From positions 15,624,001-15,688,000 of the forward strand of contig NC_088853.1 of the NCBI RefSeq assembly GCF_963853765.1: a stretch of 64,000 nt of DNA. Reading direction: 5' to 3'. The stretch is from Magallana gigas (lineage: Eukaryota). A program made the translations under genes and the position numbers. Under the pieces are notes generated by a model, which was given only the letters and a program-made list of their open reading frames with translations, was not told the DNA's origin and did no database searches. How positions within the stretch are numbered: the stretch's first letter is position 1; the number at the start of each line of letters is the position of its first letter. Positions 39,801 to 47,100 of this stretch are shown piece after piece.

Positions 39801-42800
39801 GTTGGTCGTTCAAAGAGGTTCCCTTGAACTTCGCAGAGGAATCAAATACGCCCCGGATCTGGTGAGGTTTCTGAGGGTGGTAGACCCCGAAGAGAGGAAG
39901 AAACCACTGCTCCTGCGTTGACTTGGAAGTGGGTGCTTTCTCAGCATGATCGTTGTCGAACAGCTTTGTCATAAAGGTCGCAAAGTGTTCCTTCTTTACT
40001 GGATCCCTCTTGAGACTTGCGTCCAAGGCTCGTGCACGTCTCAATGCAACCTCATAGTTGTTTGGTAGTCGTAATCTTGGTTGGCGGAAGGGTAGGGGAG
40101 CTACCCACTTTCCATCCTCACCTATCAATAGTTCTTTGTTCATGATGTCCATAAACATCCTATCTTCCACTGATGATCCCACTTTGTTATCATCTGGTGT
40201 GCGTCTGAATAAGTGTTCATCAGATGAAGTGTCAGATACCCGTAATCTGTTTGTCACATCTCTGGTTGGAAGCTTCTCTCTCACGGATAAGTACTGGGCA
40301 CATGGTTCAAGAATAGTTCCACGTCCGCTGTCCGTGATGAAGGTCTTGTACACATTCGCAGCTCTTGGTCTGTGTTGTCCAGACAAGCATGTGTCGCCGA
40401 TGATCGTCCAACCAAGGGGTGACCTCTGTGCAAATGGTTCGTGGTCACGTCCTATGCGCTGCTCAAGAACATGGTGGACTTGAGGAAGGTCTCTTCCTAT
40501 CAGCAACAGAATTTTTCTTGAAGCGTCAATGGGTAGGATGTCGCCGGCTATATCCCGCATGTGCTTGTGCTGAAGAGCAACGTCAGGTGTAGGGATCTCT
40601 TGGTAGTTGTTCGGTATTTCATCACACTCTAACGTGCACGGCAAGGGTAGTCTGGTCTCACCCCTGGCTGATTCAATATAGAGTCCTGAGGCAGTTCTCC
40701 CGAAGGTTGTCACTTGTCCAGAACATGACGTCATCAGGTAAGGTATTGTCTCTGTATTGATGTTCAGCAAGTCAAACAATTCCTTCTTAGCCAAGGTCTT
40801 GTTACTCTGGTCGTCAAGCATAGCATACAGAGAGACAGCTCTTCCATCATAGGTGACAGTCGCGGGAACAATTCTTGCACAAGATTTTCCCTTAAATTCC
40901 TTCCCTACTTCTGTGCAGTTGCTGTTTATGGTTGTGACGTGCTGTTCTTTTGTTACTTGCTGACGCCTAGGAGCCTCCTCCCCGCCATGAACTGATGAGG
41001 CCCTTCCAGTGGTAGGAGCTGGTGACGAATCAACATGGAGAGACGTAGTGTGGAACTCACTTCCGCATTCCTTGCACATGATGGCCTCTTTACAGTCTTG
41101 TTTCCTATGACTTGCGGAACAACACCGAAAACAGAGTCTGTGTTCACGGAGCAACTTCATACGTTCTTCAATAGGCTTGGCCTTAAACACTCGACAGTTA
41201 TTGACACTGTGTTTAACACCCGGACCGGTGTGAATTATACACACATCAAGCTTCGGCTCGTTCAGATTTCCGGATCCTGTTGGTTGATACACTGTGGTTT
41301 TCTTCGTGTTCACTCTTCCCCTTGGAACGTTCATAGGCTGCTTTTCGTTGTGGTTAGCGTCAGTGTGATACGCAAAACTTGGGTCGTTTTTCACTCTGCT
41401 CATCTCCTTCATGAAGTCAACAAACACACCAAAGGGTGGAAACACAGTCTGATGTTCAAGCTTGTACTTCATGGCTCTGTTGGTCCATTTCTCCTGCAGG
41501 CCATACGGAAGTTTTGAAATGATGGGTCTAATCCCTGAGGATGAGTCTAGATAGGCCAACATTGCACTGTACTTCGGATCCTCCTTCAAAAACTTCATCT
41601 CCATAAGAATGTCTGACAGATCGTAAAGTTTTTGATGATCTCTGTTGCCAAGCTTTGGGAAACTCAACAGTTTGGCTCTTACGGATGCTTCCACATGTTC
41701 TGGTGCACCATAGCGCTCATCCAACCTTTCCCAAAGTCTTCTTAGTCCTCTTGAGATGTCGAAGATGTTGGATGTCCTCATGCTTGTTGCGTGCTTCTTA
41801 GATTCCGGACCTAAGTACTTGATAAGAAGGTCCATCTGCTCGGAGTCCAAGACTTGAAGCTCATTCACTACACACATAAAGCTGTGTTTCCAGGCACTGT
41901 ATGATTCTGGTCTATCGTCAAAGTGAGTAAGTCTGGAGAATAGCAAGTCCTTCCTCAGGAGGAATCGGGTAACATCAGTTACTTGTGGTCCCTGATCAGT
42001 CACAAGTGGTGATAAGGGGTGTGAGGCAGCCACATACGGTTGTGCGACAGGCACGTGAGGGTGTGCGGTAGGCACGTGAGGGTGTGCGGCAGGCACATGA
42101 GGCTGTGCGTCAGGCACATGAGGCTGTGCGGCAGGCACGTAAGGTTGTGCGGCAGGCACGTAAGGTTGTGCGGCAGGCACGTGAGGCTGTGCAGTAGGCA
42201 CGTACGGCTGTGCGGCACGCACATAAGGCTGTGCAGTAGGCACGTACGGTTGTGCGACAGGCATGGACGGCTGTGTGTCAGGAACCAAAGGCTGTGCTGC
42301 AGGTACATAGGGTTGTGCATCCGGGTCAAGTTGAGTCGGATCGGAAGTACCGGTCAGTAGTCCTGGCGATGCAGAAGGTTGACGTGGAGTGGATTGATCC
42401 TGTCCTGGTTTAAAGTTGCTGACTTCGCCTAAGGAACTCGTTCGTCTCTTCATAGGTGACATCTGTATCATGGTCGATTCAAAGGCTTGACAATCAGCTT
42501 CAGCTTCTGCAGCCTCTCTCTCGAGATGTAGCATTTCCATTGCAGCATCGAGTTCCACTCGTTGTTTCCTGAGCTCCAATTCTCTGGCGGTGTATGCCAT
42601 CCTAGCCTTTGCTCGGCTTACATCAGCCCTCTTCTTCGCTAAGATGTCGGCAAAGGAGTCCTCATCCTGATAGTACTCTTCCTGATACTCCTCTTCATCT
42701 TGTGTGACGTACTGCCTCTTGCCATCAGTCGTCTGTGATTCCCGGGCATCCTCTGTAGGGTCAGGAGTGACCTGGGTGCCCTCTGTTGAGTCGGGAGTGA

Positions 42801-42822
42801 TCTGCTCTGCTGAGGTAGACAT
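36898..42822 (-). CDS. BEL/Pao Gag-Pol polyprotein (~1974 aa from the first ATG): DUF1759-like Gag, zinc knuckles, aspartic protease, RT, Pao RNase H (peptidase A17-like), integrase
   Basis: Motifs CFRCCSASHRKQDC, AMLDDQS (protease), RGVFDSS / ADVQHMF / FYVDDGL (RT), YADASEKA / IPRLELCAA (RNase H), HQGRH...CVTC, GVDIFGP / SDRGTNF / GGAWER (integrase). The track's GTG start at 42849 lies inside the LTR; the first ATG is at 42822. Confidence 0.96.
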   Translation of the reverse strand: MSTSAEQITPDSTEGTQVTPDPTEDARESQTTDGKRQYVTQDEEEYQEEYYQDEDSFADILAKKRADVSRAKARMAYTARELELRKQRVELDAAMEMLHLEREAAEAEADCQAFESTMIQMSPMKRRTSSLGEVSNFKPGQDQSTPRQPSASPGLLTGTSDPTQLDPDAQPYVPAAQPLVPDTQPSMPVAQPYVPTAQPYVRAAQPYVPTAQPHVPAAQPYVPAAQPYVPAAQPHVPDAQPHVPAAHPHVPTAHPHVPVAQPYVAASHPLSPLVTDQGPQVTDVTRFLLRKDLLFSRLTHFDDRPESYSAWKHSFMCVVNELQVLDSEQMDLLIKYLGPESKKHATSMRTSNIFDISRGLRRLWERLDERYGAPEHVEASVRAKLLSFPKLGNRDHQKLYDLSDILMEMKFLKEDPKYSAMLAYLDSSSGIRPIISKLPYGLQEKWTNRAMKYKLEHQTVFPPFGVFVDFMKEMSRVKNDPSFAYHTDANHNEKQPMNVPRGRVNTKKTTVYQPTGSGNLNEPKLDVCIIHTGPGVKHSVNNCRVFKAKPIEERMKLLREHRLCFRCCSASHRKQDCKEAIMCKECGSEFHTTSLHVDSSPAPTTGRASSVHGGEEAPRRQQVTKEQHVTTINSNCTEVGKEFKGKSCARIVPATVTYDGRAVSLYAMLDDQSNKTLAKKELFDLLNINTETIPYLMTSCSGQVTTFGRTASGLYIESARGETRLPLPCTLECDEIPNNYQEIPTPDVALQHKHMRDIAGDILPIDASRKILLLIGRDLPQVHHVLEQRIGRDHEPFAQRSPLGWTIIGDTCLSGQHRPRAANVYKTFITDSGRGTILEPCAQYLSVREKLPTRDVTNRLRVSDTSSDEHLFRRTPDDNKVGSSVEDRMFMDIMNKELLIGEDGKWVAPLPFRQPRLRLPNNYEVALRRARALDASLKRDPVKKEHFATFMTKLFDNDHAEKAPTSKSTQEQWFLPLFGVYHPQKPHQIRGVFDSSAKFKGTSLNDQLLSGPNLTNSLLGVLLRFRKEMIAVVADVQHMFHCFTVREEHRDFLSFLWYKDNEIGTELTEFRMKVHVFGNSPSPAIATLGLRKISELSEESHGPDVKEFIKRNFYVDDGLTSCSTSQEAVDLMRRTQDALKQYGNLRLHKFASNSADVMKAFEPRDLAQDIYDLNLDEDQLVQRSLGMRWNLSSDMFEFRISTDDKPTTRRGVLSTVNSLFDPLGFLSPVIISGKLILRDVVTCTSDWDEPLPDHILASWEEWSSSLKELEKIHIPRTTVVHLSKAVRKELWTYADASEKAIAAVSYMKVYYEDGSAMTGFLLGKSKVAPVSGHTIPRLELCAAVLAIEISQIVMDHMDIMFDSVKYFSDSRVVLGYIHNDKRRFFIYVSNRVEKIRSLSEPSQWNFVPTHLNPADEGTRGVVPKDIGECAWLRGTTHLQRIDDETKAEGFPLQEPLSDREVRPVCLKTECEPMLGTQRYEKFSSWDRLVEGIALLQRFIISRKGGKSQILPKSIDYSQRAENYIIKTVQREVYCEEIYCLRSKQPLPKNSSILALSPFLDDDGIVRVGGRLRHLNDATVCKNPILIPGKHHIATLLVRKYHQLVQHQGRHFTEGKVRSCGFWVTGCKRLVSSLIHKCVTCRRQRGSFATQKMSDLPTDRILPGEPPFTSVGVDIFGPWDVVTRRTRGVPANGKRWAALFTCLVTRAVHVEVVEEMSASSFINALKRFTAIRGQAKEYRSDRGTNFVGATDPLQIDAINVEDRQVKDFLHSRGTTWIFNPPHASHMGGAWERMIGLTRRILDNMLKDHSAQGLTHEVLTTFLAEASAIINSRPLTAVSSDPDSPFVLTPSILLTQKTDVPTEAVCDTTAKDLFKVQWKRVQHLAKMFWDKWKKEYLHTLQARKKWHHGQRNISVGDIVLLKDVETHRNNWPLGRITATFPGKDNLVRKVEVRVSKDGKTTSYVRPVTELILLLEN
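42018..42320 (-). repeat. 21-bp coding minisatellite in gag (~14 x AQPYVPA heptads)
   Basis: Protein reads AQPYVPA AQPLVPD TQPSMPV AQPYVPT ... AQPHVPA; the DNA period is 21. Confidence 0.9.
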
Positions 42823-42836
42823 CCTAGTCTTTTTAC

Positions 42837-43414
42837 TGTTCTGCCCCAATAAAAGTCGGACTCACAAGTGTCGGTGAAATCAGTTTATTTGGGAGACAGA
42901 TAACCGTCTCAGACGACGGTAAAAAGCTGTAACAAAAAAAAAGTAACAATCAATGACTGGTACAGGTTTCCATACAAAAAATATTAGGACAGAGTTTGCA
43001 ATTAGATTATGAAACCTTACACATATGATTTAAACAGTTGAATTCAGTCTATTCATATGATAAACAGCAAGTTAAAGTAAATTAATCAACTGCAACTCGA
43101 AATTAAATGACCAGAAATATGATGGACAAAATGGCGCCCCATACACCGAGCACATGGTAAACATAAAATACAAGATTTCAAGAATATGCATCGCTTAGCA
43201 TTACTGACATGAAACATACAGATAATTCACATAAAAATATGTTGAAATAACCTAGTTTACAAATGTCAAAAGACTTACACTGTGGATTACAAGCCTCGAT
43301 ACAGAGAATCAGAGTTGTGCATACATCGAGTATGGCGCGGTTTTCCAACATAAAAAATTAAGTCGTACGACAAATCTTTCGTAACAAAAAATAAAATGTA
43401 CACGAAACATGACA
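42837..43414 (-). repeat. 5' LTR of the BEL/Pao element, with predicted internal splice donors and an acceptor
   Basis: Donors AGT|GTAAGT (43279/43278) and TGT|GTAAGG (43021/43020); acceptor TTTTTTTTGTTACAG|C (42927/42926); YY1-like CGCCATTTT. Confidence 0.93.
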
Positions 43415-43721
43415 TATATCCAGCATTATACAATAGAAAGATAACGCTAGACCCCTATGAGTAGCATATATCAACACTCCCGACTTTCAAAATCACTTTC
43501 AAATTACCGAGAGTCCTTGTCAGATAGGATTAGCTACGTCTCACTTCACATAGCTTAAGTATCTTAGCCCATGCACCTGTCAAGTGCCATCGCTTTTTAA
43601 ACGTCCCTTTATTTCAAAGAAAGAATGTACTTTTTAAATCAAGACAACTGGAAAGCTTTACAGAGCTTTGTGGTTTTACCATATTCAAAGGTAACTCAAA
43701 TATGACTTGATGGTAATCTAG

Positions 43722-43960: not shown

Positions 43961-44103
43961 TTCAGATACCATGGGGTCCACCAAAAGTCAGATTTAATGT
44001 TGTAACTTTTAAAAAATAAATTGTCAAGTAGTAAGAATATAGCAAAATTGTTTAAACAAAACAAAACATTTCTTTGCAAGCTTCTTTTTTATTAAACTAA
44101 GGC

Positions 44104-47100
44104 TTATTTGTAAGAATTCGATTGACAAATGCTGGTGCATGCTGACAAAGTTTCAAAGTTGTTTGCATTCCCACAGCATCCTCCGTAAAAGAATGTTTCG
44201 CATCGCCCTGTTCTTCTGTTAAAATAATAACGTAGAATGCGTGCTTTGCAAGGTCCAGCTACTACTGGCAGCTCACAGCGGGAAGATAGAGGTCGCTCAA
44301 CTGAAATCAAAAAGTATACAGCCTTCGGTAACATATATGGACTTGTAATATTAACTGCGCATTGTACTCTTGCAAAGGACTTAGTCCTGTTGTTTGACTT
44401 TAATTCTCCAAAAATTTTAGGAGGCCGATTTGGGGTTTTTTGCGAAAAAACTACAATAGCATAACTCTTTATTTTTTAACCATATGTAATTTAAACCAAC
44501 TCTAGTTTATATGCGAAGGTTCATGAAAATCGACCGTCTGGTTCTTTTTAGGGACCATCTATAAATAGAGGTACATTTACTATAGGAATATATAGGAAAC
44601 TGTCATTTTCCGCACATCAAAGCAGTTTTAAAAAATACTACAATAGCTTTTTTCTGAAATTGTTATATATGATAAGTAATATCATTTCCTACATTATAAG
44701 TAAAAAACACAAAATTCTGCCGTCTGGTTTTTAGTGGGGGCCATCTCAAAATATTAAAATGCACCAAATTTTGCTATATATTTGGATCATCACGAATGAT
44801 GATTGGTATAATGGATTCATTCCAAAAATAAGGAAAATATCCTCGAGGATAGCATCATTCTGTTTATAAAATTTCAACAGCGTACAATTTTTACTTTTTC
44901 TTTTATGTTATTTCTTATAACGTACTCCTACAAAGCTTCATTTTATCATAACGTCATAAAAGCGCAATGGAAATGCTCCCCTACCGCACAACGTAAAAAT
45001 CGTATTAAAAATAAAAATTTCCTTTAAAAATCTTAATATTTTTATCTGTATTTTGTTTATTGTGTTCAATTTTATAAATGATATCGAAAAAAAATCATAA
45101 GCAGTATAAAACAACTATATTATATTAGAATGCGCAGTAACATGCGCAATGCATTCTAAAGTCGGCCTCCTTAAATATTTTCGCTTTTAACCTCACATTC
45201 TAGAACCTTCTAGAAAAGAATGATTGCTAGGATTATTAAAGAATCGACTATTTGCAGGTACATGTCTTGAATTACAGCTAATTTGTTTCATGTTATAATA
45301 TTCTACTAAGAGGTAACAAAATTAAGTGTAGTTAATTGCTAGACTGATTTCCCTTAATGAACGTTACGCCACTGAATTGTATTGAGTAAATAAGCCTTCA
45401 AAGTTAATGTTTGGTTTCTCATTGGTTGATAGCAAAGTGTTTTTCAAACGAAGAAATGCTTTTCTATGTCTTGTCATTCGGTCGGGAATTTTTTTCTTAT
45501 GGGTTGATAGCAAAGTGTTATAGACTTGACATTTTGTAAACAGTTATCAATTAATCTGTTAAGTTTAACACAAAAACAAAACTCATAACTTGATATTCAA
45601 TGAACTCTCTTTCGAATGAATTGTTAAGTGTTGTCATTTGGTCGGGGTTTTTTTCAGAGTTATTTTACAACTAAACCACATAAACACTGACAAAGAGAAA
45701 CAAATCTGTCCATTGATATAACTCTTTTGTATTATTTTTGTTATCTGTTGTTATCTATTTTAGATAAAAAGCAGAATTCACCTTTCAAATTATTTTTCTT
45801 TTAATATATATTCATATTGATTGTCTAAATTTCTATATCAGCGTTTTATCACACACCTTTCTGTATAAGTATGCAAATTTTAGGGTTTTGTTTTCCTGAT
45901 ATAGCATAAAGGTAAGCAAATAAAGTCTAATTTCAAAGATTACGTTACAGATTACGAAAAAAATTCATAATCACTCTTTAAAACCCATCATATTCTACAT
46001 TTTGTTTTACTAGGTGTACAATCATCATTTTATACCTGATGTATAGAATAAGGGTAAAGAGATTAAGACATACCTGGCCACTCAGTGACCCCCGGAGGAA
46101 CACACATATCTCTGCACCCGCATCCCCATGAACAGCACTTGTAGTCTGTAACGAAAATTTAGAGATATTATTTTTATATAAAAAAAAATTAAAAAAAACA
46201 ACCTTTTGACATATGCCCATTAAACACACAAATACCAAGCATTGTAGAAAATGATAAACAGCATGGTAGGATTGACTTTTTTAAAAACTTTAAAAAAAAT
46301 TAAAAAGGTTGATTTTCAAAATCATTCAGAACATTCATCAACCATAATTTAGAAAAATAATTATTAAACATTTAACTGGTTTTTTTAAAATAGAAAAGGC
46401 ATAATTATCAAAATATATATCTTTAACTCTGTATTAACCTTACGGGTTCACCTTTCTATAAATAAGATGACGTCAATTGGAAAAAAAGAAGGAAAACTTA
46501 CTGCTGGGACATTCACCGTCATGCCCACACCTGATGTTGTTAAGATTACAATCACAGGGGGAGATCATCTGTAGGTTACATTGTCCAGGTTTGGTCCTTA
46601 GTCCATAGGGACAGAAGGGGGCAGGGAAAGGCGATCCTGTATTCTGACCTTGTGCCTGCTAAACAAATCAAAAAGGTCAACAAAGGTTAAATTAATGTTA
46701 GATAACAACGATTTAATCTGACATTACATCCTGAATTTGTTAACCTCAATTAACTTCAATATAAGCACATAATGGGTTTTGTTTTAACCTATCAATCTTC
46801 ATGAAAAGAATAATTTTTATATTCGCAGTTAATCTAAGCATTTGTTGAGTTTTTTTTTTTTTGGTTTGCTTTATCGGATTATATTTGAAATAACTTTAAC
46901 TTTTTTGCAAGAAAAAAAATTGCATCGCCGATAAAATCAAAGCCCAGAATAAATATTGGAAATTAAAAGTATTCAGAATTCTGGCAGGGTTTTTTCCTGT
47001 CTGAAACTTTTCGAGAACTTTCAATGATCTGAAAATGTTTTCAAAAAACGCTACGTTTAAGATATTTTCAACGTGTTTGTTTCGGCTTTTTATGTCAATT

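What the first reader, a model, noticed from the sequence alone, without database searches (positions are those of the whole stretch)
42826..43279. Candidate splicing-dependent self-priming: an LTR intron junction recreates the exact complement of the primer-binding site
Seen: directly after the 5' LTR the element reads GTAAAAAGACT-AGG-ATG, with no TGG-type tRNA PBS and only 14 nt before the gag ATG. The LTR contains a consensus donor (CCACAGT|GTAAGT, 43279/43278) and a strong acceptor (T8GTTACAG|CTTTTTAC, 42927/42926). Joining them gives AGT|CTTTTTAC, a perfect 11-nt reverse complement of GTAAAAAGACT, with pairing ending exactly at the LTR boundary. A second donor (ATATGT|GTAAGG, 43021/43020) gives a 10-nt match, and the first donor region itself holds a 10/11 copy (AGTCTTTTGAC). 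Knowledge: fission-yeast Tf1 self-primes using 11 nt from its own 5' leader annealed next to the LTR. Inference: this BEL lineage may prime minus-strand synthesis from its own spliced leader, so only spliced RNA would be replication-competent. I know of no description of this, but could not search the literature.
Basis: partly seen in the sequence, partly recalled or inferred. Interest (0 to 1): 0.9.

Follow-up and report, generated by a model that had tools for sequence, protein, structure and literature searches.

The report
Splice-assembled self-primer of BEL/Pao retrotransposons
An active oyster BEL/Pao retrotransposon has no tRNA primer site; the 11 bases next to its 5' LTR are exactly complementary to a sequence that exists only after an intron inside the LTR is spliced out, and RNA reads plus matching base changes in about a dozen related elements (molluscs to sturgeon) point to a previously undescribed, splicing-dependent way of priming reverse transcription.

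Summary
The element (minus strand, 36256-43414) is a young, intact BEL/Pao retrotransposon with identical 578-bp LTRs and an ATATA target duplication. About 11 near-identical copies exist in the genome.

The predicted LTR intron (43278-42927, GT..AG) is really spliced. The junction 43279^42926 appears in sense-strand reads of three poly(A) RNA runs and in one RNA-run contig. The joined form is absent from the genome.

The junction AGT|CTTTTTAC is the perfect complement of the 11 nt that abut the 5' LTR.

Elements from Crassostrea virginica, Saccostrea, Ostrea, Mytilus, Pecten, a sturgeon and six metagenome lineages repeat this design. Each has a consensus donor and an acceptor inside the LTR, and the junction is a 10-13 nt complement of its own post-LTR sequence. 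The changes are compensatory, and the split falls at different places. A Patella relative carries the same 11-mer contiguously in an intron-less LTR.

Best reading: Tf1-like self-priming whose primer sequence is assembled by splicing (about 0.8). Priming itself, the transcription start and cis versus trans action are not shown. The second donor is not supported.

I found no description in the searchable literature. First-stage notes of this scan report the same idea for other BEL families of this genome; I did not check them.

The parts
42837..43414 (-). 5' LTR (578 bp, TGT...ACA)
   Evidence: 100% identical to 36256-36833; flanked by TSD ATATA
36256..36833 (-). 3' LTR; carries the same intron at 36346-36697
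   Evidence: spacing 6581
43415..43419 (.). target-site duplication ATATA (other copy at 36251-36255)
   Evidence: all 11 copies have 5-bp TSDs
43279..43281 (-). last 3 nt of LTR exon 1 (AGT), the 5' part of the 11-nt PBS complement; donor GTAAGT follows
   Evidence: junction reads
42927..43278 (-). 352-nt GT..AG intron inside the LTR, with a T9 polypyrimidine tract and TTACAG acceptor
   Evidence: joint 42926/43279 'skips 352, CT..AC' in X1, X21, X22 and X23, all sense-strand; joined form absent from genome; donor and acceptor kept in all 24 LTR copies examined
42919..42926 (-). first 8 nt of LTR exon 2 (CTTTTTAC), the 3' part of the PBS complement; the predicted primer 3' end lies between 42919 and 42918
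   Evidence: the equivalent ...TTTAC|C is conserved in relatives
42826..42836 (-). primer-binding site GTAAAAAGACT abutting the 5' LTR
   Evidence: (identical in all 11 copies)
43265..43275 (-). 10/11 near copy AGTCTTTTGAC directly after the donor hexamer (unexplained)
42884..42889 (-). AATAAA polyadenylation signal in LTR exon 2
   Evidence: sequence (print of the LTR)
43329..43338 (-). GCGCCATACT, an initiator-like motif conserved in a related LTR; candidate start region about 55 nt upstream of the donor (conjecture)
   Evidence: conserved block; sense depth rises across U3 towards the donor in X21, X22 and X23; not mapped
36898..42822 (-). single gag-pol ORF, 1974 aa
   Evidence: Pfam Peptidase_A17 2.9e-44 and DUF5641 1e-28
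36834..36843 (-). polypurine tract AGACGGGGAG next to the 3' LTR
   Evidence: same motif in relatives

Best explanation
This BEL/Pao element starts minus-strand DNA synthesis by self-priming, as fission-yeast Tf1 does. The difference is that its primer sequence is not contiguous in the DNA.

The LTR holds a spliceosomal intron. Only after the intron is removed do the last 3 nt of LTR exon 1 (AGT) and the first 8 nt of LTR exon 2 (CTTTTTAC) lie side by side. Together they form an 11-nt stretch that pairs with the 11 nt directly downstream of the 5' LTR.

By analogy with Tf1, a cut after ...UAC would leave a 3'-OH. That end would be extended through U5 and the rest of R. Strand transfer would use the R segment downstream of the cut.

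The plus strand copies the primer, so the post-LTR site is rewritten from the junction in every cycle. This would explain the perfect, lineage-specific complementarity.

Every genomic LTR keeps the intron. The template must therefore supply an unspliced LTR copy, either its own 3' LTR (cis model: 5' spliced, 3' unspliced) or an unspliced partner RNA primed in trans by a spliced RNA.

Shown: the intron is spliced; the junction complements the site; the design is conserved with compensatory changes.
Inferred: priming, the cut, and cis versus trans action.
For: Splicing:
- The joint 42926/43279 (GT..AG) is seen in four runs, and all reads are sense-strand.
- The joined form is absent from the 564-Mb genome.

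Position:
- The complement ends exactly at the LTR boundary, which 5-bp target duplications define in the window and in seven relatives.

Covariation:
- In the first 8 lineages, 87 of 88 junction:site cells are Watson-Crick and 1 is G.U. Six of the 11 pairs change on both sides.
- The split differs between lineages: 3+8 in oysters and scallop, 6+5 in Mytilus, 5+6 in sturgeon.
- Six further metagenome lineages give 10-13 nt.
- In the swap control, own LTR against own site gives 9-13 (mean 11.1). The 182 swapped pairs average 6.45, and the only ones reaching 10 share the same site.
- Every donor that gives the match is GTAAGT, GTACGT or GTGAGT, and every acceptor has a pyrimidine tract.

Other support:
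- A Patella relative has the same 11-mer contiguous in a 324-bp intron-less LTR, which is the plain Tf1-like arrangement.
- Predicted folds of the spliced leader keep 9-11 of the 11 junction:site pairs (all 11 in four) in 7 of 8 lineages; in Patella they appear only when 50 nt of exon 1 are included.
- There is no TGG-type site and no tRNA T-arm next to the 11-mer anywhere in the genome.
- In the papers I read, the one BEL/Pao site described is tRNA-type, and self-priming is described only for Tf1/sushi, Tcn1 and TAR.
Against: - No direct evidence of priming, and no minus strong-stop DNA was seen.
- The start site is unmapped. Junction reads cannot be assigned to the 5' or the 3' LTR. Reads at the start of U3 come from the 3' LTR, since they carry the polypurine-tract side as loose ends.
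- If a 5'- and 3'-spliced RNA were copied, the progeny would lack the intron. None of the 22 genomic LTRs does, so the model needs an unspliced copy in the template.
- The 11-bp duplex is A/U-rich and weak, -11.3 kcal/mol.
- Ostrea and L052 need one G.U pair.
- RNA reads carry the allele of the other copies at 42942, so they are evidence for the family, not for this copy.
- X1 may contain DNA, as its flanks have depth 3-4.
Confidence: 0.8

Rival explanations
1. The junction:post-LTR pairing is real and selected, but it serves another purpose. For example, a leader structure in spliced RNA could hide the gag start codon 14 nt away, or mark RNA for packaging or dimerisation, comparable to the U5:AUG pairing of HIV-1 (from memory). 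The true primer would then be something else.
For: The paired site lies 3 nt from the gag ATG in the window. The duplex closes the predicted leader fold. Priming is not shown directly.
Against: In relatives the ATG lies 39 to about 125 nt from the LTR end, yet the pairing still begins at the first base after the LTR. That position defines a primer site. No alternative primer site is present. Perfect matches in young copies fit a site that is copied from the primer.
Confidence: 0.1
2. A host RNA, such as a tRNA fragment or another small RNA, primes at GTAAAAAGACT, and the LTR junction merely resembles it.
For: Half-tRNA priming is described for some Ty1/copia lineages. The site begins with GTAAA or GTGAA in most lineages.
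Against: The sites differ at 6 of 11 positions between lineages, and each matches its own LTR junction. No tRNA T-arm motif lies within 45 nt of the 11-mer in the genome. The 11-mer is not enriched in the genome: 668 hits against 1429 for the control.
Confidence: 0.03
3. The LTR intron is an ordinary 3'-UTR or leader intron, and its junction matches the post-LTR bases by coincidence.
For: Eight of the 11 nt (CTTTTTAC) are contiguous in an A/T-rich LTR, and exon ends in AGT are common.
Against: Chance rates are 0.03-0.5% per element even when any GT..AG pair is allowed. The pattern recurs in about 13 lineages with different sequences and different split points. Mytilus has only 5 nt on the exon-2 side.
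Confidence: 0.01

Closest known systems
Tf1 / Tf2 / Tj1 and the Tf1/sushi group (Ty3/gypsy chromoviruses): self-primed reverse transcription
   Same: No tRNA site. A short stretch of the element's own LTR-derived RNA pairs with the bases abutting the 5' LTR. The length is similar: 11 nt in Tf1 (from memory of Levin 1995/1996, cited), and 11 nt here and in the seven fetched genomic relatives. Predicted folds put the duplex at the base of an R-U5 structure.
   Different: This is a different superfamily, BEL/Pao. The complement is split by a spliceosomal intron and exists only in spliced RNA. Whether it lies at the very 5' end of the RNA is unknown. RNase H cleavage was not tested.
Predicted self-priming in Tcn1 (gypsy) and TAR/Houba/Osr-1 (copia) plant elements
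   Same: Self-priming inferred from complementarity between the LTR and the post-LTR sequence.
   Different: There the complement is contiguous. No splicing is involved.
tRNA-primed BEL/Pao elements (for example Achilles of the olive fly, tRNA-Tyr site)
   Same: Same superfamily, with LTR-gag-pol organisation.
   Different: They have an 18-nt complement to a tRNA 3' end. This clade has none.
Patella vulgata relative (L037)
   Same: Same 11-mer and the same post-LTR site as the window (GTAAAAAGACT). The RT region is 57% identical.
   Different: The LTR is 324 bp without the intron, and the complement is contiguous.

Membership tests
BEL/Pao LTR retrotransposons (Belpaoviridae) | Pao-type aspartic peptidase (Pfam Peptidase_A17) in a gag-pol polyprotein | tested here: met
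   PF05380 E=2.9e-44, plus DUF5641 at the C-terminus. Homologues carry PF05380, rve and PF18701.
BEL/Pao LTR retrotransposons (Belpaoviridae) | Direct LTRs with short inverted ends, a short target duplication and a polypurine tract | tested here: met
   578-bp identical LTRs running TGT..ACA, 5-bp TSD, AGACGGGGAG tract.
Tf1-type self-priming (mechanism) | No tRNA-complementary site; the post-LTR bases are complementary to the element's own LTR-derived RNA | tested here: met
   11/11 complementarity, but only across the splice junction. It covaries in relatives.
Tf1-type self-priming (mechanism) | The complement is the very 5' end of the transcript | tested here: inconclusive
   The start site is not mapped. 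The depth profile hints at starts within about 100 nt upstream of the donor.
Tf1-type self-priming (mechanism) | RNase H cut of the RNA duplex creates the primer 3'-OH; minus strong-stop DNA is attached to own RNA | not testable with these tools
   Needs particle-associated nucleic acids.
Tf1/sushi group (phylogenetic family) | Ty3/gypsy chromovirus pol | tested here: not met
   The polyprotein is BEL/Pao. So it works like Tf1 but is not a member.
Spliceosomal intron | GT..AG ends, consensus donor, pyrimidine tract, junction in RNA but not in DNA | tested here: met
   GTAAGT...T9GTTACAG. Junction reads in 4 runs, sense strand. No joined form in the genome.

The most novel reading that the evidence does not exclude
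In a widespread clade of BEL/Pao elements (molluscs, a sturgeon and unidentified marine hosts), reverse transcription is gated by the host spliceosome. The primer sequence exists only in spliced RNA, while the intron survives because the copied LTR comes from an unspliced copy. Two splice states of the same transcript would then have to cooperate in each replication cycle, and the primer site would be rewritten from the splice junction every generation.
Probability: 0.6. Interest if true: 0.92.

Novelty: new variant of a known kind. Interest (0 to 1): 0.88.

Why it matters
How BEL/Pao elements prime reverse transcription is barely studied. The main survey of the superfamily does not mention primer sites at all.

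If this reading is right, it adds a third superfamily to the self-priming elements. It would also be, as far as I could find, the first case in which a primer for reverse transcription is assembled by splicing. That would couple retroelement replication to the spliceosome and to the choice between spliced and unspliced RNA.

It also explains why standard LTR annotation tools find no primer site in these abundant bivalve and fish elements, and it gives a simple sequence rule for annotating them.

The family in the window is young and apparently active in a farmed oyster: identical LTRs, about 11 intact copies, and transcripts in several RNA runs. The prediction can therefore be tested by observation in natural material.

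Tried and rejected
I did not work around this and used the look-up of encoding contigs and the search for related loci instead.
- L023-L030: these share 70% identity with the LTR and looked like a sister family. They are LTR-like fragments inside a larger repeat of about 2.2 kb. They keep donor and acceptor but have no matching post-LTR site, so they are uninformative.
- P0001 is the same family in C. angulata, with LTRs 99.65% identical, so it gives no covariation.
- P0089, P0088 and P0003 returned no DNA, and P0044 was withheld.
- Second donor 43021/43020: no junction reads.
- The model 'transcript starts at CTTTTTAC with plain 8-nt self-priming' is rejected. Mytilus has only 5 nt on that side, and the sturgeon has 6.
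- 'Complementarity is always exactly 11 nt' holds for the first 8 lineages but not for the metagenome lineages, which show 10-13 nt.
- The similarity between the bases after the donor hexamer and the start of exon 2 is strong in four lineages and absent in the others. It remains unexplained.
- The start site could not be mapped. Read laying allows one call, and contig depths in X1 are confounded by possible DNA.
- The first attempt at the chance test had a loop error and was redone.
- Metagenome loci L044, L050, L058, L077 and L081 have no definable 5' LTR end.

Full report
**Anatomy**

The finding lies in the 5' LTR of a full-length LTR retrotransposon on the minus strand.
- The two LTRs (43414..42837 and 36833..36256) are 578 bp and 100% identical. 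They begin TGT, end ACA, and are flanked by a 5-bp duplication ATATA. A polypurine tract AGACGGGGAG abuts the 3' LTR.
- One ORF of 1974 aa runs from the ATG at 42822 to the stop at 36898. It carries the Pao peptidase domain (PF05380, 2.9e-44) and DUF5641, so the element is BEL/Pao.
- The 564-Mb genome holds 11 full-length copies with near-identical LTRs, intact ORFs and their own 5-bp duplications. The family is very young.
- The host is an oyster. RNA runs are labelled oyster, and the same family occurs in Crassostrea angulata with 99.65% identical LTRs.

**The observation**

- After the LTR comes GTAAAAAGACT (42836..42826), then AGG, then ATG.
- The donor is CCACAGT|GTAAGT, with its last exon base at 43279.
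- The acceptor is T9GTTACAG|CTTTTTAC, with its first exon base at 42926.
- The joined AGT|CTTTTTAC is the exact complement of the 11-mer and ends at the LTR boundary.
- A 10/11 copy, AGTCTTTTGAC, sits at 43275..43265.
- Unspliced, the longest complement is 8 nt.
- Even if any GT..AG pair in the LTR is allowed, a complement of 11 nt or more at a given site is found at 2 of 5882 mock sites and in 15 of 3000 shuffled LTRs.

**RNA evidence**

I laid four runs on 42600-43500.
- Exactly one joint was reported: 42926/43279, skipping 352 nt, with ends CT..AC on the plus strand. On the element's strand this is GT..AG.
- It is carried by 7 reads (6 start points) in X21, 2 reads in X22 and 3 reads in X23. 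All three are poly(A) RNA-seq runs, and all junction reads have the orientation of sense transcripts.
- In X1 a junction contig has depth 102, beside the unspliced contig at depth 142.7.
- The joined sequence does not occur in the genome, even with two mismatches allowed. It is therefore made at the RNA level.

Limits of this evidence:
- Reads at the first bases of U3 carry the polypurine-tract side as loose ends, so they come from the 3' LTR.
- The 5' flank of this copy is silent.
- X1 may contain DNA, because its flanks have depth 3-4.
- The window's copy has a private base at 42942, whereas all other LTRs and all reads have the other base. The reads therefore document the family, not this copy.
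- Sense depth rises across U3 towards the donor in all three raw-read runs. In X23 it goes from 0 to 4.3, and no reads enter from the pol side. This suggests starts within about 100 nt upstream of the donor, near a conserved initiator-like GCGCCATACT (43338..43329). The hint rests on few reads. The start site is not mapped.

**Comparative test**

Relatives were fetched through their polyproteins. I defined LTR ends from LTR pairs and from 5-bp target duplications. In every case the site starts at the first base after the LTR.

| Lineage | Post-LTR site | LTR junction | Split |
|---|---|---|---|
| C. virginica | GTGAAAAGACT | CCCACAGT\|gtaagt ... tttgtag\|CTTTTCAC | 3+8 |
| Mytilus californianus | GTAAATTGACA | CTGTCAA\|gtacgt ... 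attgcag\|TTTAC | 6+5 |
| Pecten maximus | GTAAAAGTACC | CCACGGT\|gtaagt ... attacag\|ACTTTTAC | 3+8 |
| Saccostrea echinata | GTAAAGGAACA | CACTGT\|gtaagt ... tttgtag\|TCCTTTAC | 3+8 |
| Ostrea edulis | GTAAAAGAACT | TTACAGT\|gtaagt ... tttgtag\|TCTTTTAT | 3+8; 10/11 plus a terminal G.U |
| Sturgeon (Acipenser ruthenus) | GTGAAAAAGCA | TTTGCTT\|gtaagt ... atttcag\|TTTCAC | 5+6 |

The C. virginica site differs from the window's by one compensated change.

Across these lineages plus the window and Patella:
- 87 of 88 cells are Watson-Crick.
- 6 of the 11 pairs change on both sides.
- The 12th position forms no Watson-Crick pair in any of the 8; in the sturgeon it could be a U.G wobble.

A metagenome scan added L039, L040, L052, L060, L064/65, L079 and L093/97. 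Their complements are 10-13 nt and their introns 90-696 nt.

In a swap control, each LTR with its own site gives 9-13 (mean 11.1). The 182 swapped combinations average 6.45, and the five that reach 10 involve lineages sharing the same site.

All the donors involved are GTAAGT, GTACGT or GTGAGT, and all acceptors follow pyrimidine tracts.

The Patella vulgata relative has a 324-bp LTR without the intron. It carries the window's 11-mer, AGTCTTTTTAC, contiguously, and has the same post-LTR site. This is the plain Tf1-like state.

**Mechanism**

The post-LTR position, the absence of a tRNA-type site and the perfect, lineage-specific complementarity are what a primer-binding site shows when it is regenerated from its primer in each cycle.
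- MFE folds of the spliced leader keep 9-11 of the 11 junction:site pairs (all 11 in four) at the base of the R-U5 fold in 7 of 8 lineages. In Patella they appear once 50 nt of exon 1 are included. The duplex energy is -11 to -14 kcal/mol.
- By analogy with Tf1 (described; the 11-nt detail is from memory of Levin 1995/1996), a cut after the conserved ...TTTAC|C would give the 3'-OH.
- Minus strong-stop DNA would then copy the 82 nt from 42918 to 42837. It would transfer to the R segment upstream of the AATAAA-directed poly(A) site (42889..42884).

The part of the LTR upstream of the cut, including the intron, is copied from the 3' LTR region of the template.
- The intron is present in all 22 genomic LTRs, and no joined form exists.
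- The copied RNA must therefore be unspliced there.
- Two options remain: a molecule spliced at its 5' copy but not its 3' copy (cis), or a spliced RNA priming an unspliced genomic RNA (trans).
- I cannot decide between them. I also cannot say how the 5' end of the primer is defined. In the mollusc lineages the complement is preceded by a conserved (C)AC.

**Rivals**
- A host RNA primer is very unlikely. The sites differ between lineages and follow their own LTRs, and no tRNA T-arm motif lies near the 11-mer in the genome.
- A purely structural or regulatory pairing cannot be excluded. It does not explain why pairing always starts at the first base after the LTR while the distance to the gag ATG varies from 14 to about 125 nt.
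- Coincidence is excluded by the controls.

**What is known**
- In the open literature I could search, self-priming is described for Tf1/Tf2/Tj1 and the Tf1/sushi group, and is predicted for Tcn1 and TAR elements.
- The one BEL/Pao element whose site I found described uses a tRNA (Achilles, tRNA-Tyr).
- The main BEL/Pao survey does not discuss primer sites.
- Searches combining self-priming, BEL/Pao, LTR and intron found nothing relevant. Subscription journals are not covered.
- First-stage notes of this scan report the same idea for other BEL families of this genome. I could not fetch those loci, so they are leads, not evidence.

**Verdict**

The start site could not be mapped.

This is a new variant of self-primed reverse transcription, found in a superfamily where it was not known. 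The primer complement is assembled by splicing.

Priming, the cleavage, the start site and cis versus trans action remain to be shown. Because the element is an intact virus-like element of an animal, I built no consensus and proposed no changes to it. The mutational test is referred.

Noticed in passing
window 42020-42318: A 21-nt (7-aa) tandem repeat of about 14 units lies inside gag. ORF lengths of the genomic copies differ in steps of 7 aa (2036, 2043, 2050 ... 2085), and the C. angulata copy has a longer array. The repeat number is therefore polymorphic between copies.
   Followed up: partly
window 42942 (and the same LTR position in the 3' LTR): Both LTRs of the window's copy carry a private base at the start of the pyrimidine tract. 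The other 22 LTRs examined and all RNA reads carry the alternative base. This copy is therefore not visibly expressed in the runs laid.
   Followed up: yes
window 43265-43275; Pecten L036, sturgeon L038, L097: The bases directly after the donor hexamer resemble the first bases of LTR exon 2. In the window this reads AGT[GTAAGT]CTTTTGAC against CTTTTTAC. The match is 7/8, 6/8, 5/8 and 6/8 in four lineages and at background level in the others. It could be a vestige of how the intron arose or a decoy pairing site. It is unexplained.
   Followed up: partly
L023-L030 (other chromosomes of the same genome): An LTR-like fragment 70% identical to this LTR, with donor and acceptor conserved, is embedded in a larger repeat of about 2.2 kb present in 18 or more copies. 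It has no matching primer site and contains short repeats (ATACCATTACCCGTGTGG...).
   Followed up: partly
window 28345-28607, 30904-31166, 44052-44314: A 263-nt dispersed repeat family (65-82% identity) flanks the element on both sides. It was not identified.
   Followed up: no
L037 (Patella vulgata): An intron-less 324-bp LTR carries the same 11-mer and the same 13-nt post-LTR sequence (GTAAAAAGACTAG) as the oyster element, although gag is only 39% identical.
   Followed up: partly
proteins P0005, P0126, P0078: BEL/Pao polyproteins are filed in public databases as proteins of a bacterial MAG (Sedimenticola sp.) and as 'alcohol-forming fatty acyl-CoA reductase' of a cichlid. These are probably host contamination and a gene-model fusion, respectively.
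   Followed up: no
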